A DNA stretch of 64,000 nt from positions 62,001 to 126,000 of IMG/VR virus record IMGVR_UViG_3300046559_001153; one strand, given 5' to 3'. The position numbers were made by a program, and so were the translations under genes. Of the stretch, positions 4,101 through 26,735 are shown in pieces. Every line of letters begins with the position of its first letter. Position 1 is the first letter of the stretch. The notes under the pieces were generated by a model, which worked only from the letters and a program-made list of their open reading frames with translations, was not told the DNA's origin and made no database searches.

Positions 4101-4397
4101 CTGTGCCATTATCGTGATAAGTCAGGTGATCCGGATATGTTCCGGGTCGTTTTGCAGGTGCATGACGCTGTGATTCTTGAAGTTCCGATTAGCAAGGTCG
4201 CCAGTGTTGCGCAGACTGTGATGCCGCTGTGCCTAGAAGAGCAGGTGCCGGTTTATCCGTGCACACTATCTGGCGATTCCACAGGCGACGGGCCTTACCG
4301 GTTCTCTGCAGTTACTGAGGTATTTGCCAGATGGGGTGAAAGGATAACCAAAGCAGACTGTCAAAAATACGGGTTACCCCTCGAACTGGGTGTTTAA
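1122..4397 (+). CDS. polA: Family A DNA polymerase with N-terminal uracil-DNA-glycosylase-like domain and 3'-5' exonuclease
   Basis: UDG-4-like RIMVIGKTPN..E...VGGPG and HPA; Exo I VDAEW, Exo III YGNYDAD; Pol motifs TGRWSSSDPPLQNI, ESDFTGAEL, RDIAKRIMFGMFYG, NVPIQG, LQVHDAVILEV. Confidence 0.93.
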   Translation: MADRVLISDLSASKDNTKKQLSKQAVAGLRVYPFTAPGMPKPGPSFVAAARQWVGEPDEPPHVLSKDQIVRRKEAYDKAVNEQLAQFYEDALYNPFDMPVGFRHKDPPFREARFGSSHFVPGSLWDTSNMGDRHNMPPGGYGPRRARIMVIGKTPNQDEVRHNRNLVGGPGSYLLEMLRQYGIDDMASWYVTSLVKFIPPRDKTALAAEWVQDCAPLLQMELRIVRPEIILCLGADAVKAVFGKGVKLAEVEGRDVPLTYNYHLSDSHYPLRHTAKVFSVVHPAFVMRTPAEGPRLAASLSRFSRMLAGEDLGQEEVDIDHRVIRTMDDLVLTLQDADDECTDGLIAVDAEWNGRHPQNRDAYVRTIQFSWAHGKAANIVVTDSTGGWCFDEPKEELIARLLDFFEDKRVVGHYLATDLEVLIHWGLDLRPQYAVPQDNRGDQLAWERTRNEGGANTAYMAHAIEETGKFGLDALSLRYTSAPAYWAELDQWKKAYCAKRKIKLKSLEGYGPCPDATLVPYGNYDADVTLRIYHKLNDLLDCDYQGNCCREAYWRSMSVEPAVIEINRTGLTLDMTRARVLAERFMKARDELEDRIRAWAKWPKLNLRSPLEVKEFLFGAKLNGKKSPTGGMVRLRPPEAKSLRLAPIFDTSKRPISWAEIEERRETDIYNPSTNKSNLQLLFYENEKYSEQIRWFRDFRFVDQVMKSVLQPKDRRYVNEDSVRDFKGGIPWAMCDDGRVRTHIWTTKETGRWSSSDPPLQNISKVRDDDYARILGAENYKNKIRSMFRATRASDPGAWVNEDCLLIESDFTGAELCMTAWMSGDAAMIEHVRRNALPENDPDYYDIHSNVAVLAFRLKCLPTKAGLKSLPGPTKDGKKYLRDIAKRIMFGMFYGRGAAAISREAREQGVDVSVDEAQGVMETIFDLYPNLRPFYAECKARASNPGWICTAFGSFRRVMPTRDQEVLSEFERQFMNVPIQGGVAYAMSQGITNLCHYRDKSGDPDMFRVVLQVHDAVILEVPISKVASVAQTVMPLCLEEQVPVYPCTLSGDSTGDGPYRFSAVTEVFARWGERITKADCQKYGLPLELGV

Positions 4398-14975: not shown

Positions 14976-15542
14976 ATGATTTTTTCTATCGATCCCTCGC
15001 TGACTGGCACAGCCGTCTGTTTGTGGGATCCGTTAAAACACGAACCAGACCTCGTTCGACGTTTCGAGTCAGACGCGACACATACCCTGGTCGATCGCAT
15101 TCGCCGTTATCGCCGTTTAGTCCGATCCGTGTTGTCGTGCTTTGATTTTGCCAAAGTGACCCTCATCTTGATCGAGGGTTACAGCATGGGCTCTAAGGGT
15201 GCCGCGGTGACTGGTTTGGCTGAGTACGGCGGCATTCTTCGAAATCAGCTGGTGCGCAAAGATGGGCCCCCTGTCATTGAAGTGTCGCCCCACTCGTTGA
15301 AGAAGTTCGCGACCGGAAAAGGGAACTGCAACAAGGGCTTTGTTCAGGCCCATGTGGCCCGTCGCTGGCAAATCATTTACGAGACTGACGACGAGATCGA
15401 CGCCTACGTGCTGGCGCGGATGGGCCTGTGCTATCTCGATGACGCGGCGTTTGAGACCACTGGCCAGCGCGAGGTGATTGATAAACTCAAGAACCCGGTC
15501 GGCAAATCAAAAAAGAAACGAAAGGCAAAAAATGACGGATGA
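14976..15542 (+). CDS. ruvC: RuvC-like Holliday junction resolvase
   Basis: SIDPSLTGTA, LIEGYS, SLKKFATGKGN.NK, DDEIDAY catalytic D/E/D/D layout. Confidence 0.85.
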   Translation: MIFSIDPSLTGTAVCLWDPLKHEPDLVRRFESDATHTLVDRIRRYRRLVRSVLSCFDFAKVTLILIEGYSMGSKGAAVTGLAEYGGILRNQLVRKDGPPVIEVSPHSLKKFATGKGNCNKGFVQAHVARRWQIIYETDDEIDAYVLARMGLCYLDDAAFETTGQREVIDKLKNPVGKSKKKRKAKNDG

Positions 15543-16566
15543 ACCGATGCCTGATCCTGCGACCCCTGTGGAGCCGCCGGCCGAACCCTCGAAGGAAGAG
15601 CAAGAGGCGGCTTTCAACGAGTGCCGAATGCTGTGCGAAACAGACCACGCTATCAACGAGGCCTTTCACGCTGTAGCCACAGCCAGATACGTGCATCAGA
15701 CGGCCAAAAATCGAATGCTCGAACTGGTGAGGGCAAAAGCCAAAGAGAAGCTGACAGAGTTGATGATCACCAGCGCGTCTATGTTCGAATCTGAGCACAA
15801 CCAGATCACACTGCAGCAGGTCCGCGACCGACACGTCAATATCCTGACGCCATTCCTGTTGAAGTTGATCGGCACCTGTGAGGAGGAAGAGAAGCAAGCA
15901 CGCCACGCAGACATAATGCAGGCAGAGGAACAACGTCGTAAGCGTCCGTTGGCTATCGGCGATCTGACCCTGGATCGTAACCGGTCAATCATCGTGCCTG
16001 TTTACTGGCTGCCTTCGGTGAGCGTGTTGATCGAGCAGTTGCTGCTGTCTCTTCCGGATGACCATAACATGCGCATCGTCCGTTTGACTAACTTCAAGTC
16101 TCACCCCGACGCGGCTAAGAGGTGTGTCGAGGTGCCGGCCAAGATCTTTGACGGAATGGCTCAGTCGGCCGACCGATTTCGACATGCGATTACGTCGCTG
16201 GTTCAAGAACGACTACGACAACCCTCAGTTGACATTGTGATCATTGACGACTTGCTCAAGCTTGGGCAGCCGTCAATCTTTGGAATGGACCCGGTGCGAC
16301 ACGCTGCCGCCATGCATAAGAACATGAGAAATGGCCTGAGAGAAGTCGGCGCTGTGTTGATTGCCGGCTTTCAGACTGACTTGTCTCCATCTACGGATCC
16401 GAAAGACAGCACATGGGGCCCATTGGCCCAGTTTACTCGCATCCTGGCTATGGACGTGCGTGATCCTGTCGAGGGTATCCGCCGTATTGAGTGGGGTCCT
16501 TTGACGTTTCGAGTCGACGAGGAAACCTGGGACAAAGCCCGAGGCCTCGGGCTCATTGTCCCCTAG
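15532..16566 (+). CDS. Hypothetical protein; C-terminal half may be a degenerate RecA/DnaB-like fold lacking Walker A
   Basis: VDIVIIDDLL and MRNGLREVGAVLIAGFQT resemble DnaB DYLQL and LK.LA.EL.VPVI.LSQL; no GxxxxGK. Confidence 0.35.
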   Translation: MTDEPMPDPATPVEPPAEPSKEEQEAAFNECRMLCETDHAINEAFHAVATARYVHQTAKNRMLELVRAKAKEKLTELMITSASMFESEHNQITLQQVRDRHVNILTPFLLKLIGTCEEEEKQARHADIMQAEEQRRKRPLAIGDLTLDRNRSIIVPVYWLPSVSVLIEQLLLSLPDDHNMRIVRLTNFKSHPDAAKRCVEVPAKIFDGMAQSADRFRHAITSLVQERLRQPSVDIVIIDDLLKLGQPSIFGMDPVRHAAAMHKNMRNGLREVGAVLIAGFQTDLSPSTDPKDSTWGPLAQFTRILAMDVRDPVEGIRRIEWGPLTFRVDEETWDKARGLGLIVP

Positions 16567-16578
16567 TAGGAGAACAGG

Positions 16579-17226
16579 ATGGCCCGCGGCAAGAAGATCG
16601 ATGAGTGGGAGTTTGAAATTGACAGCGTGATCGTCGTGATCCCCGTCTACATGCAAAAGGCCAAGTACGAGACACAGTTCAACGCATTGGCTCCCCAGTA
16701 CGAGTTGAACATGTGGGATAAAGACATCAACAAGCTTAAAGATGCGACGCGGGACGAACTGGCCGCCAAGCTGAGTGTTGTCTGGGAGCGATTCATTTAC
16801 GTCACATTCTGTGGGGTGAATGACCAGCCAACTGTTTACGACGACGATAACGCAGAGGAACTCGCCGAAAAACAACTCACAGGCGAATTCGAGGTTTTTA
16901 GTGGTCTGCAGTACGAGATCGTGGAGATAACCACCCGTGGTGACGGCGATAAGATGCATCGTCATCTACACGGGAATTATGGGAGCAGGGCGCTAAGCGG
17001 TCTTCCGCATACTGGTGTAGAGGCCCGCAATCTGCATTACGACTGGAAGCCGACGACGTCTGCCCTGATACCGTATACGCCTGAGAACATTGAAGCTCTG
17101 GAGACGATCCGCGGCCAGTTCATCGCGTTGAATAAGCTGCTCAAAGACCGGTTCATGCCGGACAAGATCGACGCCCTGCTGACAGAAGTTACGTCAAGTA
17201 AGTTGCGGCTCATGTACACCCCGTAA
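16579..17226 (+). CDS. Hypothetical protein
   Basis: AGGAGA SD, clean ORF. Confidence 0.7.
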   Translation: MARGKKIDEWEFEIDSVIVVIPVYMQKAKYETQFNALAPQYELNMWDKDINKLKDATRDELAAKLSVVWERFIYVTFCGVNDQPTVYDDDNAEELAEKQLTGEFEVFSGLQYEIVEITTRGDGDKMHRHLHGNYGSRALSGLPHTGVEARNLHYDWKPTTSALIPYTPENIEALETIRGQFIALNKLLKDRFMPDKIDALLTEVTSSKLRLMYTP

Positions 17227-17241
17227 CTTTTCAAAAAGGTA
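17224..17241. promoter_or_regulatory. 18-bp palindromic motif copy 3 (TAACTTTTCAAAAAGGTA)
   Basis: Overlaps stop codon; 17/18 identical to copy 1. Confidence 0.7.
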
Positions 17242-17262
17242 ATTCATTTACAGAAAGAAATC

Positions 17263-17961
17263 GTGCAGAACACAAGCATTTTGTTCGTTGGTTATTCCAT
17301 CAGCGTCAAGGAATCGCTCGAAGGGCTTGTCCCCAACTGGCCGCCAGACGCTGTTGATGCGATCCCGGCCGGCGAGGCCGCCGTTTTGGAGGCGCGAGAG
17401 GATGTCCGCAAACGGGTTGCGGAAGATCCCGCCGTCCATTTGTTCGACCTGGCCCGAGTGGTGATCCTTGATCCGCAGGCCGAAACTGTGTTTGACACAG
17501 CTACGATCGATAAGCCAGCCGTTTCGACCGCCGCTGGCTGGCTGCTGGATCATTACCCCGACGCCTGGGGATTGACGCCGTTCCATTACACCAGCGGTCC
17601 TCCCAAGGTGTCGTTCTACGGTTTTGACATGCGTCTGTTCCTCAAACTGCTGGGACTCGGCGCCGCTCAGCTGGGACAAGCCTTGCCCGCCGGCTTGTGG
17701 TACAGCAACACCGACCATCGTGACATGGAAGGCGCTCTATTGCCCAGCCAGTGCACCGCCAAGAAGTTCACGCTGATGCAGGCGATGAAGTCTATCGGCA
17801 TGCTGGACGATCCGGAAAACCAGATTGATTCTACCTGGGAACCCAAGAAGGATCCGATGATCGACGTTCGAATTGCGTCCGAGATCGCGACCAGGTTGGG
17901 ATTGCTTCTAGTGAAGAAGGTTGAGAAGATCGGCGGCAAAACCAAGACCCGATCCAAGTGA
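17263..17961 (+). CDS. Hypothetical protein, weak resemblance to PolB-type 3'-5' exonuclease fold (first acidic motif missing)
   Basis: FYGFDMRLFL...WY..TDHRDM...FTLMQAMK pattern; GTG start after GAAAG. Confidence 0.35.
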   Translation: MQNTSILFVGYSISVKESLEGLVPNWPPDAVDAIPAGEAAVLEAREDVRKRVAEDPAVHLFDLARVVILDPQAETVFDTATIDKPAVSTAAGWLLDHYPDAWGLTPFHYTSGPPKVSFYGFDMRLFLKLLGLGAAQLGQALPAGLWYSNTDHRDMEGALLPSQCTAKKFTLMQAMKSIGMLDDPENQIDSTWEPKKDPMIDVRIASEIATRLGLLLVKKVEKIGGKTKTRSK

Positions 17962-17968
17962 GACTGCC

Positions 17969-18661
17969 ATGACGCCAAAGCCGCACGGAGTAACGACTAA
18001 TTCGACACGCTTCGGCCCGGATGAGGTGAGCTACAAACCTTTTCCGCTGGGCCAGGCCAAGTCGTTAACTGAGCTGGGCGGAAGCCTGGCTTTCTTTACT
18101 CCGGCGATTCTGTTTTTGAAGATCGGCATGCACAACGGACCCTTTGCCGATTTCCAGGCGGAGATCGGCAAGGACGTCCCGTTCTACCATCACCGGTTCA
18201 ATTCACAGATATTCAAAGGCCTCGAATCTCCAAACGGTAACCAGGAGTGGAACCACGTGCTGTTTGCCTTGCCGAGCGAGCACTCAGACGCCTTCCTGCG
18301 ATTTATGGATTCGATCGTCATGATGAAGGAAAACGGATCGGGCAATCAGCCACTGACAGTCCGCGTTGGTCTACAGGCTTTGCAGATTGAAGATCCTCTG
18401 ATGCACGATAAGGCCGTCATTCTGCCGCCTGTGATTCCGAGCATTGACATCACTGTTCTTGGGGCCGATACGAATATCGGTATGCTGTACATGGAGCCCG
18501 GGACACCGGCCCAGCTGTGCGCCGGGAGCCCCAGTCCGAGGATGCAGAAATTTGCCAGAGACATGGTCAACGGTAAGAATCCACATACCGAGTCTGACGC
18601 TGCCTACTACAAACAGCTGTTCGACGCGGCTACTAAACCGAAAGAGAAACCCGATGATTGA
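17969..18661 (+). CDS. Hypothetical protein
   Basis: ORF in array. Confidence 0.65.
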   Translation: MTPKPHGVTTNSTRFGPDEVSYKPFPLGQAKSLTELGGSLAFFTPAILFLKIGMHNGPFADFQAEIGKDVPFYHHRFNSQIFKGLESPNGNQEWNHVLFALPSEHSDAFLRFMDSIVMMKENGSGNQPLTVRVGLQALQIEDPLMHDKAVILPPVIPSIDITVLGADTNIGMLYMEPGTPAQLCAGSPSPRMQKFARDMVNGKNPHTESDAAYYKQLFDAATKPKEKPDD

Positions 18662-18935
18662 GCTCGAATTTCCGCCCGAAGTTGATGTCCAAGTTTCGAA
18701 GGATGCCGCGGGACACACGAAAATAGTTCTGACTCCCCGGTTCTACTCGAAGCGAGGCCAGGTGGCACTGGGCTACCTTACGACCACGTTCAAGTCGCAG
18801 CAGAAACCGGACGACAAGTATATGCTGCGAATCTCCGGTGCGACCGGCTTGATCACCTTCCGATCGGCCGACAGGGCGGTTGAGCCGGCCTTCCTGACGC
18901 CGGAGCCACCCCCTGACAAGAAGGCAGGCACATGA
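18654..18935 (+). CDS. Hypothetical protein
   Basis: ATG overlapping previous stop; ATGA overlap with next. Confidence 0.6.
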   Translation: MIELEFPPEVDVQVSKDAAGHTKIVLTPRFYSKRGQVALGYLTTTFKSQQKPDDKYMLRISGATGLITFRSADRAVEPAFLTPEPPPDKKAGT

Positions 18936-19408
18936 TCAATCCGACTCCCGAGACAGTTGTTCCCAGCCGTTTGAATTACGTCAAGGTGTTCGTCCGGTTC
19001 ACACATTTTAAGATGAGTCCGTACGCATTCAGCGATCACGCCGAGCAGTCCTGGCAACTGGTCAGTGACGATCCGGATATGGCTGAGACGATCAGTGCCT
19101 GGGTGGACGAGACCAAATCGCTTATCATCTCTGCTGAGACTAGGACTGATATTTCGCACGGTAACATGGCAAAGGTCGTGTCTCAGACCACCACAGTCAT
19201 TTACACGAAAGCGGTGGACTATCGTGGACGAGAACCAAGAAAAACCGGAACAGACGAGTCCGCCAGACTTATCCACGGGCCCCGACCCGGTCCAACTGAC
19301 TCCAGCCCCGGATCCGTCAACCCAGGAGACGTTGTCCCCGCCGGCCCCGAAGTCGACCTGGAACGAGTTCCTATCTCACTGCAGTCCGGCAGCGAAGTCG
19401 GCGCTTAA
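18932..19408 (+). CDS. Hypothetical protein (3' end overlaps next gene by about 185 nt)
   Basis: ATGA-coupled start. Confidence 0.55.
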   Translation: MINPTPETVVPSRLNYVKVFVRFTHFKMSPYAFSDHAEQSWQLVSDDPDMAETISAWVDETKSLIISAETRTDISHGNMAKVVSQTTTVIYTKAVDYRGREPRKTGTDESARLIHGPRPGPTDSSPGSVNPGDVVPAGPEVDLERVPISLQSGSEVGA

Positions 19409-19973
19409 AGGCGAGCGGATCAGGACAAAGACTCCGGTCCCTGTCACCTATCGTCGCTTGTTGAAGCAATTGAGCGAAGACACCGTGGAATCGCTCAGTG
19501 AGCTGGCAGCCCCTCCGCCGTCCGACTATTGGGCTAATGCCTGTTGGAATTTGGTTGTCTGTCGTGATGGAGATTATGCGACTATTCACGAGTTCGGCAC
19601 CGAAGACGAGGTGGCGGCCGAGATTCGCAAGTACGACGGAACCGACACCATCGTGTTTGTCGTGCATGGCCGACAGGCCAAGATCTCGAGGAAGCCTCAG
19701 CGATTTCTGATTCTGCCTGACTGCGAGCAGGTCTTGCCCATCTTCGACGTGAGCGCTTTGGGACTGCCCGCCAGGTACACACCGCAGGGCCTGGACCTGG
19801 CTGTGCAGGAGAATGGTTTCTTGGGCAGGGCCGAGTACACGTTGCCGATTCCTAAGGGTCAGTTCAAATTGGAATCAAAGCATCCGACAGTGGTTCCCGA
19901 CACGCCGCCGCGTCACGAGGATCTGGCGACTGATGACGAGGAAGAAGATGAGGATTTTGATGAGTACGCGTGA
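19224..19973 (+). CDS. Hypothetical protein with Pro-rich N-terminus and acidic C-terminus
   Basis: Long ORF ending DDEEEDEDFDEYA; start (GTG 19224) uncertain. Confidence 0.65.
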   Translation: MDENQEKPEQTSPPDLSTGPDPVQLTPAPDPSTQETLSPPAPKSTWNEFLSHCSPAAKSALKGERIRTKTPVPVTYRRLLKQLSEDTVESLSELAAPPPSDYWANACWNLVVCRDGDYATIHEFGTEDEVAAEIRKYDGTDTIVFVVHGRQAKISRKPQRFLILPDCEQVLPIFDVSALGLPARYTPQGLDLAVQENGFLGRAEYTLPIPKGQFKLESKHPTVVPDTPPRHEDLATDDEEEDEDFDEYA

Positions 19974-20059
19974 GCTTAATTTTTGACTGAAATCAGGCAT
20001 ATAACTTGAAGCCGTTCGGTTTTAGACCTGGCCAGCGATCGTGTTGGCTTCGGCTTTAG

Positions 20060-20097
20060 ACCTCGCCCGCAATCCTGTCGGCGAGGTATTTTTTATT
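20060..20097 (+). terminator. Rho-independent terminator directly upstream of a small gene (possible attenuator)
   Basis: Stem acctcgcc/ggcgaggt followed by attttttatt. Confidence 0.7.
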
Positions 20098-20108
20098 CAA
20101 GGAGCGAG

Positions 20109-20312
20109 TTGCCCAAGTTAAGGATCTTTACGGGCGGAAGGATGGAAGGAAGACTCATTCTTGGCACGAAGACGAAAAACGTGCCCGACGGCTACATCAA
20201 AGTCTGGATTGCCGACGCGGTAAATGCTGACGGTTCGTACGTCAACAAACGCGTTGTGGTAGTCTCGTCTCACGAGTACAGAGGACTCGTGGCGCCGTTC
20301 CTCGCGAGGTAG
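20109..20312 (+). CDS. Small hypothetical protein
   Basis: AAGGAG SD then TTG start. Confidence 0.6.
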   Translation: MPKLRIFTGGRMEGRLILGTKTKNVPDGYIKVWIADAVNADGSYVNKRVVVVSSHEYRGLVAPFLAR

Positions 20313-20337
20313 TTTATGTACCAGCGAGTAGATTGCC

Positions 20338-20464
20338 TAGCTTCGAAACAGTACCCCGTGTCGTGGATTATGCACAAGCGGGGATGAACTGTCGTAGCTG
20401 TCCGCAAGCAGCTTAACTTGCGGTAACGCCAATATGGCGTGCCTCGTCGGGCTCAACGAAAGGC
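20338..20464 (+). ncRNA. Candidate structured RNA leader (four consecutive hairpins, last one pairs the SD)
   Basis: Stems acagt/actgt, ccccg/cgggg, ccgcaag/cttgcgg, acgcca/tggcgt, gcct/aggc; no family recognised. Confidence 0.4.
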
Positions 20465-20473
20465 GATGTCACC

Positions 20474-22324
20474 ATGAAGGTCCGCGAAAAAGGAGTGAGG
20501 CGCGGGGGACGAAAAGGGAATCTGTTCGGCCAGACCGTCGAAGATATCGATAGTCTGGATCGGCTTAATGAAGAGTGGCGAACGGAGGACCGTTGTTTCA
20601 ATGCAGTGGGAGAGATGATCGCGTCTAACGACCCGGAGCGACACCACTGGAGCGGTGTCGGGATGGCCGTCGTTTTTGATCCGGCATTTCCGTTTATTCG
20701 TGCGATGGTTAAGACCGAGTCAGGCTATCAACGGCAGCCGATGGTGCACTCGGTGCTGGCTATTCCGGCCGGACGCGATGTGGCGTATTTCGGGCACAAT
20801 AAACGAGCTACTGTTCTGGCCAGGCGTCATTATTTGACTGTTTTCGACGGTCGTATTTGTTTGCAGAGCATCCTCGGACTAACACCAGAGGGGACGTACA
20901 ACACGTCCGACGAGGCGTTCTGGGATTTATCGAAGCCACCGACATCGATCCCCAGAAACGCAGTCATGGTGAAGGAGCGAGCTGCCTATGTTTCAGCGCC
21001 GTTCAGCGGGCATTACGCCGTTGTCCTTCGCGAGGATTTAGGCAAGTTCTTTGCGACGATCAAGGATCCCCACACCGGCCTGACCTGTGTGGTGGCTGAA
21101 ATTCCCTATGATCTACTCGACAAAGCTTTGACGGAGTCGGAACCTCACAATGATGGGGCTCCAGTCGCTGTTGGCGACAAGCTGATTGAGTTCGAAGGCG
21201 TGCAGACGTTTATGCAACTGCGCGATTCCACGTCACGTGTAACCCTGGAGAGCTATCTGTCGCGTCGTCCGATGATGCCACGCGACGTGTTAAATCCTGA
21301 AAAGCACAGTTTCGATCTTCGTATTTACACGACGTTGATGAATCGGCTGACCAGTGGATTGGTTGATCGTCTCAATCTTTTCAACAGTTTGCCGCGACGC
21401 TCAGAGGGTAGGCCGCAAGGGCGTCGTTTTGTGATGTGGCAAGACGAATACTTGTCGAGCCCAAACGCCCATCCCGGAGACTGGCTCCCCGAGGCGTACG
21501 TGTTTCACGAACGAGGGGCAGATCAAAGTGACGATGATTACTTTGTTTCTATCCTCAAAAAAATGAACCTCAGTTTCAAGGAAGAGCTCGAGCGACAGGT
21601 TCATGACTATTTCGGGGTTCCCGCACCGGTTGATGGCGAGATCCTCTCTGTGACACTGCGTCAGCCCGACGTGTTTGGCAAACAGGGCTATGACGTGGTG
21701 TTCGTGGGATGCGATGGTCACCGTCGCATTTATACGCTGCCGTGGACAGCCTCATTCCCGGTTCGTGGACTGGAGAGAGGTCCCAAGCTCGGTCCGATCA
21801 AGGCGAGAGAATTGATGGCTTACGCTTTGACGTTCGGTAGCACACGCATTCAGACGATGCGAAATGAGGAGCACCTGCTGCCGCTGTGCGACGGAAATAA
21901 AGACCTGGCTACCACCTTGTTATACCGGCTCGGTTTGTTGCTCGTGCAATGTCGATGCGAGCCGGCGTTCTGCGAGGAGATCTCTGGCGGAAAACCGGGT
22001 TTGATGCTTTCGGCGCGGTACCTTGAGTCGAAGGCGGGGCATCTGCCGAATGAACAATTCATTTGGTGGGACATGCGGCCGTTGCTGCCTTACTACCGAG
22101 GTGACCTGGGATGTGCCATCCTTCCCTGGATTAAACTGGGGTCAGTCGGCCATGTTTGGCGGACCATGGCCTTTACCTGCAACATGTGTAGATTGAACTT
22201 TATTCCCCATATTGGGAATAAAGTTGACGAGGATTTGATCGGTTTTCCGTTCGACCTGATTAAAGCCGGCCATTGCCGTCCACGATCAGGTGCACCAGTT
22301 TACGCAGTTGCGAAAGCAAGCTGA
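20474..22324 (+). CDS. Large hypothetical protein (616 aa)
   Basis: Long clean ORF with GAAAGG SD; no family recognised. Confidence 0.75.
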   Translation: MKVREKGVRRGGRKGNLFGQTVEDIDSLDRLNEEWRTEDRCFNAVGEMIASNDPERHHWSGVGMAVVFDPAFPFIRAMVKTESGYQRQPMVHSVLAIPAGRDVAYFGHNKRATVLARRHYLTVFDGRICLQSILGLTPEGTYNTSDEAFWDLSKPPTSIPRNAVMVKERAAYVSAPFSGHYAVVLREDLGKFFATIKDPHTGLTCVVAEIPYDLLDKALTESEPHNDGAPVAVGDKLIEFEGVQTFMQLRDSTSRVTLESYLSRRPMMPRDVLNPEKHSFDLRIYTTLMNRLTSGLVDRLNLFNSLPRRSEGRPQGRRFVMWQDEYLSSPNAHPGDWLPEAYVFHERGADQSDDDYFVSILKKMNLSFKEELERQVHDYFGVPAPVDGEILSVTLRQPDVFGKQGYDVVFVGCDGHRRIYTLPWTASFPVRGLERGPKLGPIKARELMAYALTFGSTRIQTMRNEEHLLPLCDGNKDLATTLLYRLGLLLVQCRCEPAFCEEISGGKPGLMLSARYLESKAGHLPNEQFIWWDMRPLLPYYRGDLGCAILPWIKLGSVGHVWRTMAFTCNMCRLNFIPHIGNKVDEDLIGFPFDLIKAGHCRPRSGAPVYAVAKAS

Positions 22325-22371
22325 CGACGCCCTTATGGGCGTAAGGCGAGACCCAAATTGAATGATCGATC

Positions 22372-22410
22372 ACGGTGGCGGCCAGGTGATCTGGCCGCCG
22401 CCGTTTCTTA
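22372..22410 (+). terminator. Strong hairpin/terminator
   Basis: 14-bp stem acggtggcggccag/ctggccgccgccgt then ttctta. Confidence 0.6.
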
Positions 22411-22492
22411 CGTTTTAGCCATTGGACAGGTACTGCCGTCTTCCATTCTTCTCTGGATTGCCGTATGCTGAGACCAAAGGAGACTACGAATT

Positions 22493-23662
22493 ATGCTCGA
22501 TGACAGTGCGGCATTACAGATGCTCGGTGGCGGCCCGGTCATGCAAACCCGCAAGGGCCTGCACGGCGTGAGTGTTCTGTCACCCGACCCGGATAAGCAC
22601 GTTCGCGTGGGTGGCGCCAGTGACATGGGCTTCATGGTCCCGATGGCCGATCTGATGACGGGCAGTCCGCCCGGTTTTGATCAGAGCAAGGCCGGCATGG
22701 TGGTGATTAACCCCGACGAATCAGGCAAAGGGACGTTGATCGATTTCAGCAAGTTGACCCCGGATGACGTGAATAGGGCTATGCGGATGGGATCCGATCC
22801 ATCAGATGCGATGGAGAAATTGGCCAAGCTGCATCCCCCACGATCCGCAGCGGTTGTCCAGCCCAGGCAGGTCCCCGTCGAACGTGTTATTTTGAATCAG
22901 TTGCCCCGGGTAGTCCAACATCCCCAAGCCATGCTTCCGCCGGCCAATCCGCCCTCGATCAATCCACCGCGGGTGATCTTGCCGGGTTTTGCCACTGTCG
23001 GGCAACCCCAACATATTCCCCAGGAACAGCCCATGCAAGCTCAGCCTCCGATGATGATGATGGCTCCCCCTGCGTCTCAGACTTGGACGTCGCCGGCTCC
23101 GTCTGTGGCCCAACCCGCGTTGCCCAATCCCAATGCCCCGATGTACCCGGCACAGCAGCCCGACGCCTTGTCGGTGATCATGCAGACTTTGATGGGAATG
23201 CAGCAACAAATCGACTCGCTGCGTCCTCAGCAGGTTCAGCCGTTTGTGCAGGAAGCTCGTCAGCCTGATTACACTCCCCTGGAGACTGAGGCCATTGCCG
23301 ACCTGAGTGCGCTGGAAATCCCCTGGTTGACACCCGTTGTCATGCCGCCAACCGTGGACGTCATGTTCAACCTGGGTGATGCGGGAGGCGTTCGTACCAA
23401 GTACCATCACGTCGAAATCACCGACGCATTGATCCTGTTGATCTACGATTCGCGGTTCGAAATGGCCACGCAGTATACGCCGCCGTTCACCAGAACCAGG
23501 GAAGCGGGACCCCTGATTTTGCAGATTGGCAAGTCAAAATCCCAACATCAGGCCCATCATTATCCCGGCCTCGATTTCGCTTTGGGTGTTTACCACGTAA
23601 CATTGTTGATGAAGGTGGTTCTCGAGCCCGAAGACCCGGTCGATCCGGCCAACGTCATTTAG
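22493..23662 (+). CDS. Hypothetical protein with central Pro/Gln-rich linker
   Basis: AAGGAG SD; low-complexity P/Q/A segment. Confidence 0.75.
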   Translation: MLDDSAALQMLGGGPVMQTRKGLHGVSVLSPDPDKHVRVGGASDMGFMVPMADLMTGSPPGFDQSKAGMVVINPDESGKGTLIDFSKLTPDDVNRAMRMGSDPSDAMEKLAKLHPPRSAAVVQPRQVPVERVILNQLPRVVQHPQAMLPPANPPSINPPRVILPGFATVGQPQHIPQEQPMQAQPPMMMMAPPASQTWTSPAPSVAQPALPNPNAPMYPAQQPDALSVIMQTLMGMQQQIDSLRPQQVQPFVQEARQPDYTPLETEAIADLSALEIPWLTPVVMPPTVDVMFNLGDAGGVRTKYHHVEITDALILLIYDSRFEMATQYTPPFTRTREAGPLILQIGKSKSQHQAHHYPGLDFALGVYHVTLLMKVVLEPEDPVDPANVI

Positions 23663-23670
23663 AGGCGAAC

Positions 23671-23826
23671 ATGGAAAAGCGAGCAGTAATCGAAGAGGGG
23701 CGGACGCCCCGCGAACAGGAGCTGTCGCAGCTGAAGAAGGCCAGCAACTGCGCCCCGCCAGAGCTCGAACAACATACGACGCAACGGCTGGCTGACGCGG
23801 CCGAGCGATCGTCGCAGTCCAAGTAG
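23671..23826 (+). CDS. Small hypothetical protein (51 aa)
   Basis: ATG after GAGG, fills gap MEKRAVIEEGRTP... Confidence 0.5.
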   Translation: MEKRAVIEEGRTPREQELSQLKKASNCAPPELEQHTTQRLADAAERSSQSK

Positions 23827-23849
23827 CCTAAGACCGCAAGGATGCCCTG

Positions 23850-26735
23850 ATGATTGGTTCTCCGGTGCCCAGCGGTATGGGCGGTTACGGCGATCAGTTC
23901 CCTGATCCGTTTAACGACGTCGCGTCGATGAACATGCCATTGGGCATGCGATCGGCCTTGAGGACGTGCGAACGCATCTGGCTGGCATCCGGCTCGTACC
24001 GCATGGCCCAGCAGCGCATCTGCAGTTACTTCTTGACTGACATCCAGTTCAACGACTGCAGCGACGATGACCGATCTAAGTACACGGAGTTCGTCGAGGA
24101 CTTCGGTTTGCTGGAAGCCGAACAGCAGATGTACATCGATAGGGCGTGCTTCCATGGCGACGTGAAAGCCGTGACCAAGCACGGGGTTTTCAAACTTCGA
24201 GAGCTGGCTGGAAAGACTGTTGAAGTCCTGTCGCAAGGCGGCGAGTATCGACAAGCAACTTTCCAGTCGCACGGTCACCAGGCGTTATTGGAAGTGGCGT
24301 TTAGTGATGGTCGAACGATTTTGGCCACACCGGAACATGAGTGGACAGCTTTGAATTGTTCCGGCAAAAAGGTTGTCGTCCAGACAAAAGATCTGCACCA
24401 CGGGTATCGTATTCCTCGAGTTGTCGCCCCCCGACCAGAAAAAAATGAAGATTATTTTGAGGGGGTACGTCACGGTTTTGTTTTTGGTGATGGAACAGCC
24501 TACAACGATGAACGGCAGTCGGCCGCCATTTTTTATACGGCGAAAGACGACGAATTGATTCCCTATTTTGATGGCCACGGTGGGGAATTGAAACCGCGGC
24601 CATCTCGACCTGAACAGCGATATTTGCACGGTTTGCCCGGTCATTACAAGCAGCTGCCGTCTAACGATAAAAGCCCCAGCTACTGGTATGGTTTTGTTTG
24701 CGGATTTTTGGCCGCAGACGGCACTGTGGATACGTATGGTTGCGCCCTGTTGACGCAGATAGCCAAAGCGACTTTGGACGTAATTGTCGACCAGCTGCCC
24801 CGCATCGGGATGTGTGCTGGGCCAATTCGTGCTCAACGTCGAATTACCGACTTGAGAAAATACAGCGGCGAAAATGCCGTTTATGACAGCACAATTCACT
24901 TTGTCACGCTGTTGAAACGATTCATGCTGCCCCAGGATTTTCTGGTGACTAAGCACCGGATAAATTTCGAGGCGAATTTCAATTCGAAGTCGAATTATGG
25001 CAAGTACGTGCATATTAAGGCCATTCGTGAAACGGGTATCGTTGACGAGGTCTTTTGTTGTGCCGAAATGGAGACGCACACATTTGTCGTCGATCAGGCC
25101 ATTCTTACGAAGAATTGCTACGGAAATGCATTCGCTACGATCATGGTCCCGTTCAAGCGGATGCTGATGTGCCCGACAGCCAGTCGTGGATGTGGCAACC
25201 AGTACCCGTTGAAGGTCGTTTACAACGTCCCCAAATTCGCATTCAAATGGTCGCCATCGACCTGCGAATTTATCGCGACCTGCCCGCACTGCCAGTACCA
25301 CGGGCCATTCAAGGTCATCGATAATCCTGAGGACATGGAGAAACGCATCCGTGTAAAGACCTGGAATCCGCACGAGATCGAAATCCTGCACGACATGATG
25401 ACGGGCGATTGCGCCTACACATGGCGTATCCCCGAAGACTACAAGACTCAGATCCGTCGAGGAAACCTGTTCCATTTGGAACGTGTCTCCATGCCGGTTC
25501 TGCAGGCCATCAAAAAGAACCTGGTCTTTCGATTTCACGAGGATGTGCTCTTCCATATGAGGGAAGAGACGCCCAGCGGTATCCGTAACAGGGGCTGGGG
25601 AATTCCGCGGGCCCTGACGAACTTCCGTCAGGTGTACTACGTACAGGTGCTCAAACGGTACAACGAGGCCCTGGCCCTGGATTACATCATCCCCTTCCGG
25701 GTGATCACGCCGGTTGCCCGCCCGGGAGCGCTAGGCCCTGGCGCCCGAGCGTTGGATCCAATGGCCACAATGGACATGGGCGATTTCAGCTCCCAGGTCC
25801 GCAACATGATCCGCCGTCGACGACTCGACCCGGCCATGTGGTGCACGTTGCCATTCCCGATCCAGTATCAGGCCTTAGGCGGCGACGCGAGTCAGCTGGC
25901 GCCGAGCCAGTTGCTCGACCAAGGGCTCCAGCAGCTCCTGAATGACTCAGGGACGCCTCTCGAGCTGTACAACGGCTCTTTGACCGTCCAGACGGCCCCG
26001 GTGGCCCTGCGGCTGTTTGAGGCGACTAATACGCCCCTTGTACGGGCCGGCAATCAGTTCCTCAACTGGGCCATCAAGAAGGCCGCCCAGATCTTGCAGT
26101 GGGAACCTGTGAAGACCGCGAACAAGCGGGTCACCTACGCCGACGACGCATTGCGACAACAGTTGATCCTGCAGCTCATGACCGGGCAACAGGTCTCTCA
26201 GACGACCGGGCTCAGCGGTCTGGGTCTTGTCTTTACCGACGAGCAGAAGCGTCTGGCCGAAGAGGCCCGCGAGCAGGCCGATATCCGTACAAAGGTGCAA
26301 GACGAGATGGACGAAGCCGGTTTGTCCAAGGCCATGGTGCAGGGACCACAGGCTGGCGGGCAGCCTGGGGCGGCCGGTGGAGCAGCTCCTCCGGGTGGTG
26401 CGGCCCCTCCGGGCGGTGCTGGCGGTGCCAGTGCGTCTGGGCCTTCCCCGATCCCCGGGCAGTCAGACGCCATGCAGCCGGCAACAGCCTACTTGCAATC
26501 CAGGCCACCCGGCGGTCAGATCGACCTGCAAAGCTTCCAGCAGTCGGCCGATCAACTTGTTTCGGCCCTGGCGTCGCTACCTCACGAACAGCGGCAAAAG
26601 CAATTGCGAGAGCTGCGTGAGGGCGATCCGTCGATGCACCAGCTCGTCAGTGGTGGATTACAAAAAGCCAGACGTCAACAGAGCAGTCAGGGACAACAGG
26701 ATTCATCTCAGCAACCACCTCCCCAGGGGCAATGA
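23850..26735 (+). CDS. Probable portal protein, intein-containing precursor (about 638 aa after splicing)
   Basis: Spliced junction IDRA-CYGNAF matches portal 'GNAF/Y' motif; LFHMREE...RGWGIPRAL matches portal 'H.R...G.SP/GIP' motif; Cys insert and G/P/Q-rich tail. Confidence 0.65.
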   Translation: MIGSPVPSGMGGYGDQFPDPFNDVASMNMPLGMRSALRTCERIWLASGSYRMAQQRICSYFLTDIQFNDCSDDDRSKYTEFVEDFGLLEAEQQMYIDRACFHGDVKAVTKHGVFKLRELAGKTVEVLSQGGEYRQATFQSHGHQALLEVAFSDGRTILATPEHEWTALNCSGKKVVVQTKDLHHGYRIPRVVAPRPEKNEDYFEGVRHGFVFGDGTAYNDERQSAAIFYTAKDDELIPYFDGHGGELKPRPSRPEQRYLHGLPGHYKQLPSNDKSPSYWYGFVCGFLAADGTVDTYGCALLTQIAKATLDVIVDQLPRIGMCAGPIRAQRRITDLRKYSGENAVYDSTIHFVTLLKRFMLPQDFLVTKHRINFEANFNSKSNYGKYVHIKAIRETGIVDEVFCCAEMETHTFVVDQAILTKNCYGNAFATIMVPFKRMLMCPTASRGCGNQYPLKVVYNVPKFAFKWSPSTCEFIATCPHCQYHGPFKVIDNPEDMEKRIRVKTWNPHEIEILHDMMTGDCAYTWRIPEDYKTQIRRGNLFHLERVSMPVLQAIKKNLVFRFHEDVLFHMREETPSGIRNRGWGIPRALTNFRQVYYVQVLKRYNEALALDYIIPFRVITPVARPGALGPGARALDPMATMDMGDFSSQVRNMIRRRRLDPAMWCTLPFPIQYQALGGDASQLAPSQLLDQGLQQLLNDSGTPLELYNGSLTVQTAPVALRLFEATNTPLVRAGNQFLNWAIKKAAQILQWEPVKTANKRVTYADDALRQQLILQLMTGQQVSQTTGLSGLGLVFTDEQKRLAEEAREQADIRTKVQDEMDEAGLSKAMVQGPQAGGQPGAAGGAAPPGGAAPPGGAGGASASGPSPIPGQSDAMQPATAYLQSRPPGGQIDLQSFQQSADQLVSALASLPHEQRQKQLRELREGDPSMHQLVSGGLQKARRQQSSQGQQDSSQQPPPQGQ
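24147..25115 (+). mobile_element. Class 1 intein with LAGLIDADG homing endonuclease (323 aa)
   Basis: N-term CFHGD, block B ATPEH, LAGLIDADG helices HGFVFGDGT and CGFLAADGT, C-term THTFVVDQAILTKN followed by +1 Cys. Confidence 0.92.

What the first reader, a model, noticed from the sequence alone, without database searches (positions are those of the whole stretch)
20338..20473. Four-hairpin RNA-like element sequestering the SD of a 616-aa unknown gene
Almost every base in 20338-20464 can pair: long hairpin (agct/agct, acagt/actgt, ccccg/cgggg, tgt/aca), ccgcaag/cttgcgg, acgcca/tggcgt, then gcct-cgt/acg-aa-aggc whose right arm is the GAAAGG SD of the ATG at 20474. Such density in a 160-bp gap suggests a cis-regulatory ncRNA (translational switch) or small RNA; no known riboswitch or ribozyme consensus was recognised.
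Basis: partly seen in the sequence, partly recalled or inferred. Interest (0 to 1): 0.6.

Follow-up and report, generated by a model that had tools for sequence, protein, structure and literature searches.

The report
Conserved leader hairpins, not an SD switch

Summary
The window lies in a 224,270-bp jumbo phage with terminal repeats, from soil and rhizosphere. With natural flanks z falls to -1.5. The gap ranks 22nd of 61 gaps in this genome, and 77 loci fold as well as its best 107 nt.

Hairpins H1-H3 are robust (pair probability above 0.83). The SD hairpin H4 is not: probability about 0.2, z -0.36. The SD is more open than in most genes of this genome.

There is no Rfam match and no second copy in the genome. 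The 616-aa protein has no full-length homologue.

One relative exists, a 787-nt ENA contig with about 53% neutral divergence. It keeps H2 (13/14 stem bases, free loop) and H3 (one compensatory pair). It also keeps an unnoticed hairpin, H0, across the stop codon of the upstream 67-aa gene (2-3 compensatory pairs). It lacks H1, which looks like a 57-nt duplication of the H0 unit. The 5' arm of H4 is not conserved (5/17).

Best reading: conserved cis-acting mRNA hairpins in the spacer of a two-gene unit bounded by intrinsic terminators, probably acting on processing or stability. With two sequences, covariation is suggestive only.

The parts
20059..20097 (+). Intrinsic terminator T1 (8-bp GC stem plus U-run), ending 1 nt before the SD of the 67-aa gene. 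It is the upstream boundary of the unit.
   Evidence: Fold. The relative L003 has a terminator at the same place with an entirely different stem sequence and the same U-run.
20109..20312 (+). 67-aa gene (TTG start, SD AAGGAG at 20099-20104). It is a real conserved small protein of unknown fold and function.
   Evidence: A 65-aa homologue (P0003, listed at 77% identity, 75% in the alignment) sits in L003. Differences by codon position are 16/6/33. AF2 gives pLDDT 73.5, four strands and a helix, with no significant PDB match.
20301..20328 (+). H0, a hairpin straddling the stop codon of the 67-aa gene (outer stem CUCGC/GCGAG, inner stem GGUA/UACC).
   Evidence: It is kept in L003 with U-A to C-G, G-C to A-U and C-G to U-G, plus an A-U to C-G change that depends on gap placement. 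Window -12.1 kcal/mol; L003 -22.5 kcal/mol.
20338..20400 (+). H1, a long imperfect hairpin (about 21 bp) specific to this lineage. Its apex (20354-20383) is a paralogue of H0.
   Evidence: Fold: -23.4 kcal/mol, z -3.1. A 57-nt indel removes it in L003. Segments 20296-20352 and 20353-20409 are 59% identical, and the period equals the indel length. The three-way consensus hairpin has 11 pairs, 4 of them compensatory. TRF does not call the repeat.
20399..20425 (+). H2, a 7-bp hairpin CCGCAAG/CUUGCGG (20402-20423) with two further outer pairs. It is conserved.
   Evidence: Pair probability 0.89. Against L003, 13/14 stem bases are identical. One A-U becomes G-U, the outer G-U becomes G-C, and the loop is 4/8 identical with a 2-nt indel.
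20426..20440 (+). H3, a 6-bp hairpin ACGCCA/UGGCGU with a 3-nt loop. It is conserved.
   Evidence: Pair probability 0.92. In L003 one pair is compensatory (C-G to U-A), the loop-closing pair is lost and two outer pairs are gained, giving 7 bp and a 5-nt loop with probability 0.87-1.0.
20441..20464 (+). H4, the proposed SD-sequestering hairpin GCCU...AGGC. It is not supported.
   Evidence: z -0.36. Pair probability about 0.2. Region 20441-20457 is 5/17 identical to L003. It is absent from the consensus fold.
20458..20476 (+). SD GAAAGG (20458-20463), 10-nt spacer and the ATG of the 616-aa gene. Conserved and predicted open.
   Evidence: 14/18 identical to L003. Accessibility percentiles are 64 (SD motif), 74 (-16 to -5) and 86 (start) among this genome's genes. 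GAAAGG also precedes other genes here.
20474..22324 (+). 616-aa orphan gene served by the element.
   Evidence: No Pfam or PHROG family. The word search and the search of 1.84 billion representatives returned only a fragment of the same phage. The Atlas model has pLDDT 0.29. The N-terminal 73 aa have a 65%-identical counterpart in L003.
22371..22416 (+). Intrinsic terminator T2 (14-bp GC stem plus U-rich tail) after the 616-aa gene. It is the downstream boundary of the unit.
   Evidence: Fold of gap 22325-22492, z -3.24.

Best explanation
The gap 20313-20473 is the untranslated spacer of a two-gene transcription unit (67-aa gene, then the 616-aa orphan gene) in a soil jumbo phage. The unit is bounded by intrinsic terminators T1 (20059-20097) and T2 (22371-22416).

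The spacer carries a set of local hairpins on the + strand RNA. H0 lies across the stop codon of the small gene, and H2 and H3 lie 34-72 nt before the ATG. All three are maintained by selection. H1 is a recent 57-nt duplication of the H0 unit, and H4 is a chance pairing.

The SD and start codon are left single-stranded. The most likely role of the conserved hairpins is post-transcriptional. They would act as processing or stability determinants, either as barriers to exonucleases or as protective ends after endonucleolytic cleavage. They might also serve as a binding site for a phage or host protein. Either way they would set the relative output of the two cistrons.

What is shown: the hairpins exist, H0, H2 and H3 are conserved with changes that mostly preserve pairing, H4 and SD masking are not supported, and the element is single-copy. 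What is inferred: the RNA (rather than DNA) level, co-transcription of the two genes, and the stability or processing role.
For: - **Conservation.** Neutral divergence to L003 is about 53% at third codon positions. H2 plus H3 are 25/29 identical (p about 1e-5). The H2 loop is 4/8 identical with a 2-nt indel, and the stretch just after H3 is 5/17 identical.
- **Consensus folds.** They recover H2, H3 and H0, with 1 compensatory pair in H3 and 2-3 in H0.
- **Pairs that changed.** Of 9 changed pairs in H0, H2 and H3, 7 stay paired. In predicted helices of the flanking coding sequence 37% do (43 of 117; p about 0.016).
- **Not coding.** Indels in the spacer are 1 and 2 nt long.
- **Strand.** Three G-U pairs in conserved helices fit the + strand RNA; one position fits the - strand instead.
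- **H0 unit.** It occurs twice in the window and once in L003, with 4 compensatory pairs in the three-way alignment.
- **Transcription unit.** Canonical terminators flank the two genes, and T1 is structurally conserved in L003. No sigma70-like promoter on + lies between T1 and the ATG.
- **RBS.** The SD and start are predicted more accessible than the genome median.
Against: - There are only two sequences. The shuffle controls of the count of structure pairs cannot reach significance (129/500 and 255/500).
- For the two hairpins defined a priori (H2, H3), 3 of 4 changed pairs stay paired (p 0.15).
- H0 was recognised with both sequences in view.
- Thermodynamic support is ordinary for this genome.
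- In L003 the probability of H2 ranges from 0.03 to 0.53 depending on context, because its G-rich loop insert offers other partners.
- No RNA data exist: all 22 public runs holding the stretch are DNA. Co-transcription, the strand and any processing are therefore untested.
- Fold energy does not settle the strand: window z -1.5 on + and -2.9 on -; L003 z -3.8 on + and -2.8 on -.
Confidence: 0.5

Rival explanations
1. DNA-level palindromes. H3 (a perfect 15-bp palindrome) and H2 would be binding sites for a dimeric DNA-binding regulator, or part of an unrecognised phage promoter for the 616-aa gene. On this reading conservation reflects protein-DNA contacts, not RNA folding.
For: H3 is a perfect palindrome of operator size. 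Symmetric changes keep a palindrome as well as they keep a hairpin. Folding of the - strand is as good as or better than + in the window. The lost pair of H3 in L003 would be a G-U on the - strand, so the strand is not settled.
Against: The spacer between the H2 arms changes in length (8 to 10 nt) and in sequence while the arms stay, which fits a hairpin and not a spaced operator. G-U pairs in H2, H2's outer pair and H0 make imperfect DNA palindromes. No sigma70-like promoter lies nearby on +. The motif does not recur elsewhere in the genome, as a phage promoter or regulon operator usually would.
Confidence: 0.13
2. No dedicated function. The hairpins would be the ordinary background of local structure in a 55% GC genome. 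The conserved blocks would then be kept for another reason, such as general RBS context, or by chance in a short alignment.
For: The gap ranks 22nd of 61 among this genome's gaps. 77 loci fold as well as its best window. The whole gap has z -1.5. H1 is dispensable in the relative and H4 is at chance level.
Against: The 25/29 identity of H2 and H3 against 47% at neutral sites is hard to get by chance. The pattern of conserved stems with a free loop, pairing-preserving changes in H0, H2 and H3, and a duplicated H0 unit that keeps its pairing, is what a structural constraint gives.
Confidence: 0.17
3. One reading: a translational switch, riboswitch or RNA thermometer in which H4 or an alternative fold masks the SD of the 616-aa gene.
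For: On the isolated 136 nt, H4 is part of the MFE. The two G of the SD are predicted mostly paired, with one partner or another. In L003 a different hairpin also pairs the GGCGA that follows the SD purines.
Against: H4 has z -0.36 and pair probability about 0.2. Its 5' arm is not conserved (5/17). The pairing partners differ between the two phages and no consensus helix results. SD and start accessibility lie above the genome median. There is no Rfam riboswitch match: the best is Guanidine-III at 15.7 bits against a threshold of 36, on the wrong strand. The candidate 23-codon leader ORF (20316-20387) loses its ATG in L003.
Confidence: 0.06
4. A cis-acting element that modifies the transcription complex. 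It would be a put-like or nut-like tandem stem-loop RNA that lets RNA polymerase read through the flanking terminators. Alternatively, the region would be an independent small RNA.
For: Two short adjacent stem-loops (H2, H3) are conserved inside a unit bracketed by strong terminators. T1 directly abuts the first gene's SD, so some read-through is required for expression.
Against: The element lies downstream of T1, not upstream of it. The stems are shorter and simpler than put RNA (own knowledge). No boxA/boxB-like motif was recognised. No promoter and no terminator delimit a small RNA within the gap. There is no Rfam match.
Confidence: 0.08

Closest known systems
Intercistronic and 5'-proximal stabilising or processing stem-loops of polycistronic bacterial and phage mRNAs (papBA, puf, malEFG REP, the ompA 5' hairpin, T7 RNase III sites)
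   Same: Local hairpins without a U-tract sit in an untranslated spacer between two cistrons of one unit. The RBS is left open. The stems are conserved and the loops are free. The review PMC3997798 states that processing of polycistronic transcripts uncouples the expression of genes in one operon, and lists work on 5' stem-loops that stabilise mRNA.
   Different: No cleavage site, RNase dependence or transcript end is known here. The conserved stems are short (5-9 bp, about -8 to -12 kcal/mol in the window). That is weaker than REP elements, and H2 and H3 are too short for a classical RNase III substrate. Only H1 (about 21 bp) has RNase III-like dimensions, and it is not conserved. The element is single-copy, unlike REP.
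SD-sequestering translational switches (riboswitch expression platforms, RNA thermometers such as ROSE and fourU)
   Same: The position directly upstream of a start codon, and a possible pairing of the SD G residues with an upstream C-rich stretch.
   Different: The SD helix is neither stable nor conserved. No aptamer-like conserved multi-helix core is present, no Rfam family matches, and the SD is predicted more open than the genome median.
HK022 put and lambda nut antitermination RNAs
   Same: Phage-encoded tandem or single stem-loops in an early or middle transcription unit that contains intrinsic terminators.
   Different: The position relative to the terminators is only half right: the element is downstream of T1 and upstream of T2. 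Its size and shape differ from put (own knowledge).
Translational operators bound by phage proteins (MS2 coat-protein hairpin, T4 RegA and gene 32 operators)
   Same: Small conserved hairpins close to a start codon whose stem is kept and whose loop bases may matter (the H3 loop AUA is largely conserved).
   Different: Those operators overlap the SD or the AUG, whereas H3 ends 33 nt before the ATG. No binding protein is known. The neighbouring 67-aa protein has no recognisable RNA-binding fold.

Membership tests
Any Rfam family (riboswitches, ribozymes, leaders, sRNAs) | Covariance-model score at or above the family's gathering threshold | tested here: not met
   No match at gathering thresholds in the 64-kb window. 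The permissive scan of 19900-20700 gave only chance-level hits. The best inside the element is Guanidine-III at 15.7 bits against 36, E 1.2, on the minus strand.
SD-sequestering translational switch / RNA thermometer | The SD is paired in the dominant structure, more than in ordinary genes | tested here: not met
   The H4 pairs have probability about 0.2. H4 alone has z -0.36. SD and start accessibility lie at the 64th-86th percentile of this genome's genes.
SD-sequestering translational switch / RNA thermometer | The anti-SD strand and the helix are conserved or covary in relatives | tested here: not met
   Region 20441-20457 is 5/17 identical to L003. There is no consensus helix. L003 pairs its SD-adjacent bases with a different, non-homologous partner.
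Intrinsic (Rho-independent) terminator | A GC-rich hairpin directly followed by a U-tract | tested here: not met
   None of H0-H4 is followed by a U-run (sequence; scans). The genome's real terminators have one: T1, T2 and others.
Repeated extragenic palindromes / MITE-like hairpin elements | Many copies in the same genome | tested here: not met
   blastn-short of the gap against the genome gives only 10-14-nt chance matches. The covariance model of H2-H3 finds no other copy in 224 kb. The only repetition is the local 57-nt duplication.
RNase III processing site (T7 type) | About 20 bp of interrupted double helix, conserved, and cleaved by RNase III | tested here: inconclusive
   H1 has about 21 bp with internal loops but is absent from the relative. 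H2 and H3 are too short. Cleavage cannot be tested with these tools.
Independent small RNA gene | Its own promoter and its own terminator delimit a short transcript | tested here: not met
   There is no sigma70-like promoter on + and no terminator-like site within 20313-20473. No RNA runs are available.
Conserved structured cis-regulatory RNA (generic) | Statistically significant covariation across relatives | tested here: inconclusive
   Only one relative exists. There are 1 (H3) and 2-3 (H0) compensatory pairs, and 7 of 9 changed pairs stay paired against a 37% background (p about 0.016). The shuffle controls cannot reach significance with two rows.
HK022 put-like antitermination RNA | Two stem-loops that act in cis on RNA polymerase to suppress downstream terminators | not testable with these tools
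   Only the gross layout could be seen: tandem hairpins with terminator T2 downstream. No reference sequence or assay was available.

The most novel reading that the evidence does not exclude
H0 (repeated once or twice), H2 and H3 together would form a previously undescribed phage-specific cis-regulatory RNA module. It would be a protein-binding operator or a polymerase- or ribosome-directed element working with the unusual terminator-abutting-SD layout upstream. It would control an orphan 616-aa gene in a lineage of soil jumbo phages known so far from two sequences.
Probability: 0.12. Interest if true: 0.55.

Novelty: new member of a known kind. Interest (0 to 1): 0.27.

Why it matters
If the conserved hairpins are functional, they give a first handle on post-transcriptional control in an almost entirely unannotated jumbo phage lineage. 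Most of the 19 proteins scanned in this window have no family, and the gene served by the element has no full-length homologue in 1.8 billion representative proteins.

The conspicuous long hairpin and the SD hairpin are the dispensable parts. The inconspicuous short hairpins H2 and H3, and a hairpin over the upstream stop codon, are the conserved ones. As a kind of feature (structured intercistronic spacer) it is ordinary.

Tried and rejected
1. **Rfam.** Nothing at gathering or permissive thresholds.
2. **Homologues of the 616-aa protein for covariation.** Each of these found only the same phage or nothing:
   - Pfam and PHROGs
   - word search
   - the full HMMER search of 1.84 billion representatives
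   - ESM Atlas
   - viral contigs
   - the phage BLAST collection
3. **More relatives of the locus.** None beyond L003, searching with:
   - alignments of the small protein and of the 616 N-terminus, in viral, metagenome and genome contigs
   - two DNA patterns in viral contigs
   - the neighbouring 961-aa protein
   - a word search with the N-terminal 110 aa
4. **Population variation.** Contigs of four soil and rhizosphere runs were laid on 19000-22500. They are identical to the window over the element, so there is no microdiversity to test pairing. No run is RNA.
5. **Leader-peptide attenuation.** A 23-codon ORF at 20316-20387 has GAGG 6 nt upstream. I rejected it because its ATG is ATA in L003 and most of the ORF lies in the 57-nt indel.
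6. **An alternative helix.** The H2 3' arm could pair with CCGCGA in codons 3-5 of the 616 gene. Its probability is about 0 in the window and at most 0.02 in L003 across four contexts.
7. **Repeat or mobile element.** No other copy exists in the genome.
8. **Promoter inside the gap.** None on +. The single hit on the minus strand, inside H1, is no more than shuffles give.
9. **Fold of the 67-aa protein, as a possible RNA binder.** The AF2 model is fair (pLDDT 73.5). Foldseek gives E of 0.5 or worse and VIA-align Z of 4.0 or less, so there is no assignment.
10. **Tandem Repeats Finder.** It does not call the 57-nt duplication. The duplication rests on 59% identity and on the period matching the indel.

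No alternative genetic code was used.

Full report
**Setting**

The window is bases 62001-126000 of a 224,270-bp virus record with direct terminal repeats. The record occurs in soil and rhizosphere metagenomes. Nearly all long ORFs lie on the + strand.

Recognisable genes in the window include:
- a family A DNA polymerase fused to a UDG domain,
- ThyX,
- a non-specific nuclease.

The genes around the finding have no Pfam or PHROG family.

The finding lies in the 161-nt gap 20313-20473. Upstream is a 67-aa ORF (20109-20312, TTG start, SD AAGGAG). Downstream is a 616-aa ORF (20474-22324).

Folding exactly 20338-20473 gives the four-hairpin structure as the MFE: -50.5 kcal/mol, z -2.69, 3 of 200 shuffles as good.

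The signal weakens in context:
- With natural flanks the + strand has z -1.50 and the - strand z -2.89.
- Among this genome's own 61 gaps of 80-260 nt the gap ranks 22nd by z. The top gaps are canonical terminators.
- The best sub-window (H1-H3, 20336-20442) has z -3.74. Even so, 77 separate loci in the genome have a 107-nt window at least as stable after GC correction, and most are coding.
- The paired fraction is at the 85th percentile.

In the partition function, H1, H2 and H3 have pair probabilities of 0.83-0.99. The H4 helix that would hold the SD has about 0.2. Alone, H4 is no better than shuffles (z -0.36).

So three hairpins are robust predictions. The fourth is not, and energy alone would not single out this gap.

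**Known families and repeats**

- Rfam gives nothing at gathering thresholds for the whole window, and only chance-level hits in a permissive scan.
- There are no tRNA or tmRNA genes in the window.
- The gap is unique in the genome.
- A covariance model of H2-H3 finds no other copy in all 224 kb.

**Relatives**

The 616-aa protein is an orphan. The word search and the HMMER scan of 1.84 billion representatives return only a 451-aa fragment of the same phage, on a contig that lacks the upstream region.

Contigs from four further metagenome runs are identical to the window over the element, so there is no population variation to use.

The 67-aa protein does have one relative. It is a 65-aa protein, listed at 77% identity by the search, on a 787-nt ENA contig, L003. 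L003 carries four aligned features:
- the end of the upstream gene,
- the small gene,
- a 113-nt spacer,
- the first 73 codons of a 616-gene homologue, 65% identical.

Differences by codon position (16/6/33 and 19/9/39) show that both ORFs are real genes. They also put neutral divergence at about 53%. All further searches for relatives failed.

**What the comparison shows**

1. **H1 is missing.** A 57-nt indel removes it in L003.
2. **H2 is kept.**
   - 13 of 14 stem bases are identical.
   - One A-U becomes G-U, and an outer G-U becomes G-C.
   - The loop is 4/8 identical and 2 nt longer.
3. **H3 is kept.**
   - It has one compensatory C-G to U-A change.
   - It loses its loop-closing pair and gains two outer pairs.
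4. **H2 plus H3 are strongly conserved.** They are 25/29 identical against 47% expected at neutral sites (p about 1e-5).
5. **H4 is not conserved.** The 17 nt after H3, which form the H4 5' arm and loop, are 5/17 identical, that is, neutral. RNAalifold finds no consensus helix there.
6. **The SD-to-ATG stretch is conserved** at 14/18.
   - It lies at 20301-20328 and straddles the stop codon of the small gene.
   - It keeps pairing through U-A to C-G, G-C to A-U and C-G to U-G changes.
   - One further A-U to C-G change depends on gap placement.
   - The encoded C-termini differ, so protein constraint does not explain it.

Indels in the spacer are 1 and 2 nt long, so it is not coding.

Of 9 changed pairs in H0, H2 and H3, 7 remain paired. 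In predicted helices of the flanking coding sequence, 37% of changed pairs remain paired (43 of 117; p about 0.016).

Three caveats apply:
- With two sequences the shuffle controls cannot reach significance.
- For H2 and H3 alone, 3 of 4 changed pairs stay paired (p 0.15).
- H0 was recognised with both sequences in view.

**Origin of H1**

Segments 20296-20352 and 20353-20409 align at 59% identity, and their period equals the indel length. The apex of H1 (20354-20383) is therefore a paralogue of H0.

The three copies give a consensus hairpin of 11 pairs, 4 of them with compensatory changes. The lower stem of H1 forms between the tails of the two units. TRF does not call this diverged repeat, so the duplication is an inference.

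**Is the SD masked?**

I folded -140 to +30 of 281 called genes of this genome. For this gene:
- the SD motif is at the 64th percentile of unpaired probability,
- the -16 to -5 region is at the 74th,
- the start region is at the 86th.

It is more open than typical. A possible 23-codon leader ORF loses its ATG in L003. An alternative helix between the H2 3' arm and codons 3-5 has a probability of 0 to 0.02. The translational-switch reading is therefore not supported.

**Transcription context**

The genome uses canonical hairpin-plus-U-run terminators.
- T1 (20059-20097) ends 1 nt before the SD of the small gene. L003 has a terminator at the same spot with a completely different stem sequence, which is strong evidence that it functions.
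- T2 (22371-22416) follows the 616-aa gene.

No sigma70-like promoter on + lies between T1 and the ATG. The simplest model is one unit (small gene, spacer, 616 gene) bounded by T1 and T2, with the hairpins inside the transcript. This is inferred, because no RNA data exist.

**Mechanism**

I take H0, H2 and H3 to be cis-acting hairpins of the + strand mRNA that leave the RBS open. Their most likely role is in processing or segmental stability of the bicistronic RNA, or as a protein-binding site.

Processing of polycistronic transcripts to uncouple cistrons, and 5' stem-loops that stabilise mRNA, are well documented (PMC3997798).

Three G-U pairs in conserved helices favour the + strand, against one position that favours the - strand. 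Fold energies do not decide the strand.

| Reading | Confidence |
|---|---|
| Cis-acting mRNA hairpins (best explanation) | 0.50 |
| No dedicated function | 0.17 |
| DNA palindromes as operator sites | 0.13 |
| Put- or nut-like element, or a small RNA | 0.08 |

The neighbouring 67-aa protein could not be assigned a fold.

**Verdict**

There is a conserved structured element, but its conserved parts are H0, H2 and H3, not the long hairpin and not the SD hairpin. It does not look like a riboswitch or an SD switch.

It is a new, single-copy instance of a familiar kind of feature, in a very poorly known phage lineage. Interest is low to moderate, and the decisive data (more relatives, transcript ends, stem mutants) are missing.

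Noticed in passing
window 19977-20104: The gap upstream of the small gene holds a block that is 81% identical to L003 (neutral about 47%), including an invariant 17-nt stretch that forms a small hairpin (20008-20023). Terminator T1 follows, with a stem sequence entirely different in L003 but the structure and U-run kept. The U-run ends 1 nt before the SD, leaving no room for a promoter. This could be an attenuator or leader, or a short terminated sRNA.
   Followed up: partly
window 19996-20011, and genome G000:C1 about 27638 (outside the window): The motif GGCATATWACTTGRAG occurs only twice in the 224-kb genome, both times in intergenic gaps. Its spacing resembles a -24/-12 promoter but it lacks the GC of the -12 element.
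   Followed up: partly
window 22327-22342: A hairpin ACGCCC-UUAU-GGGCGU, very like H3 (ACGCCA-AUA-UGGCGU), starts 3 nt after the stop codon of the 616-aa gene. It is followed by AAGGCGAGA, which resembles the SD region upstream. Two of the four ACGCC..GGCGT sites in the genome thus flank this one gene.
   Followed up: partly
window 20296-20409: A diverged tandem duplication of a 57-nt unit (59% identity) accounts for the indel against the relative and creates the long hairpin H1. TRF does not detect it.
   Followed up: yes
window 20474-20530: In the first 18 codons after the ATG of the 616-aa gene, 15 of 18 third positions are identical to L003, against 47% expected (p about 0.002). The stretch is purine-rich with SD-like runs, and codon 8 is GTG here and ATG in the relative. 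There may be an RNA-level constraint or an alternative start.
   Followed up: partly
genome G000:C1 about 144710, 175069 and 194776 (window coordinates 82710, 113069, 132776; outside the window): The motif TTTTTTAGCTATCAGC directly follows terminator hairpins in three intergenic regions. At least two have a sigma70-like -35/-10 pair downstream. It may mark a class of promoters.
   Followed up: no
genome G000:C1 about 148457 and 155662 (window coordinates 86457, 93662; outside the window): GGTTCGATCC, the typical tRNA T-arm sequence, occurs in intergenic gaps, so tRNA genes may lie there. ARAGORN found none inside the window.
   Followed up: no
window 23850-26735: A 961-aa ORF has a weak hit to the intein splicing domain (PF14890, E 2.5e-4, below the Pfam cut-off). 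It may be an intein-containing protein of unknown family.
   Followed up: no
window 1122-4397: A 1091-aa protein combines a uracil-DNA glycosylase superfamily domain, a 3'-5' exonuclease and a family A DNA polymerase.
   Followed up: no
window 19914-19955: In all four metagenome runs laid, unrelated contigs share this 42-nt stretch (8 differences in the piece listed) and then diverge on both sides. It lies in the acidic, low-complexity C-terminal coding region of the upstream gene and is probably a compositional match.
   Followed up: no
window 15478-26735: Of the nine ORFs of this stretch that were scanned, none matches a PHROG, and the only Pfam hit is the weak intein match above. The lineage is very poorly represented in public data.
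   Followed up: partly
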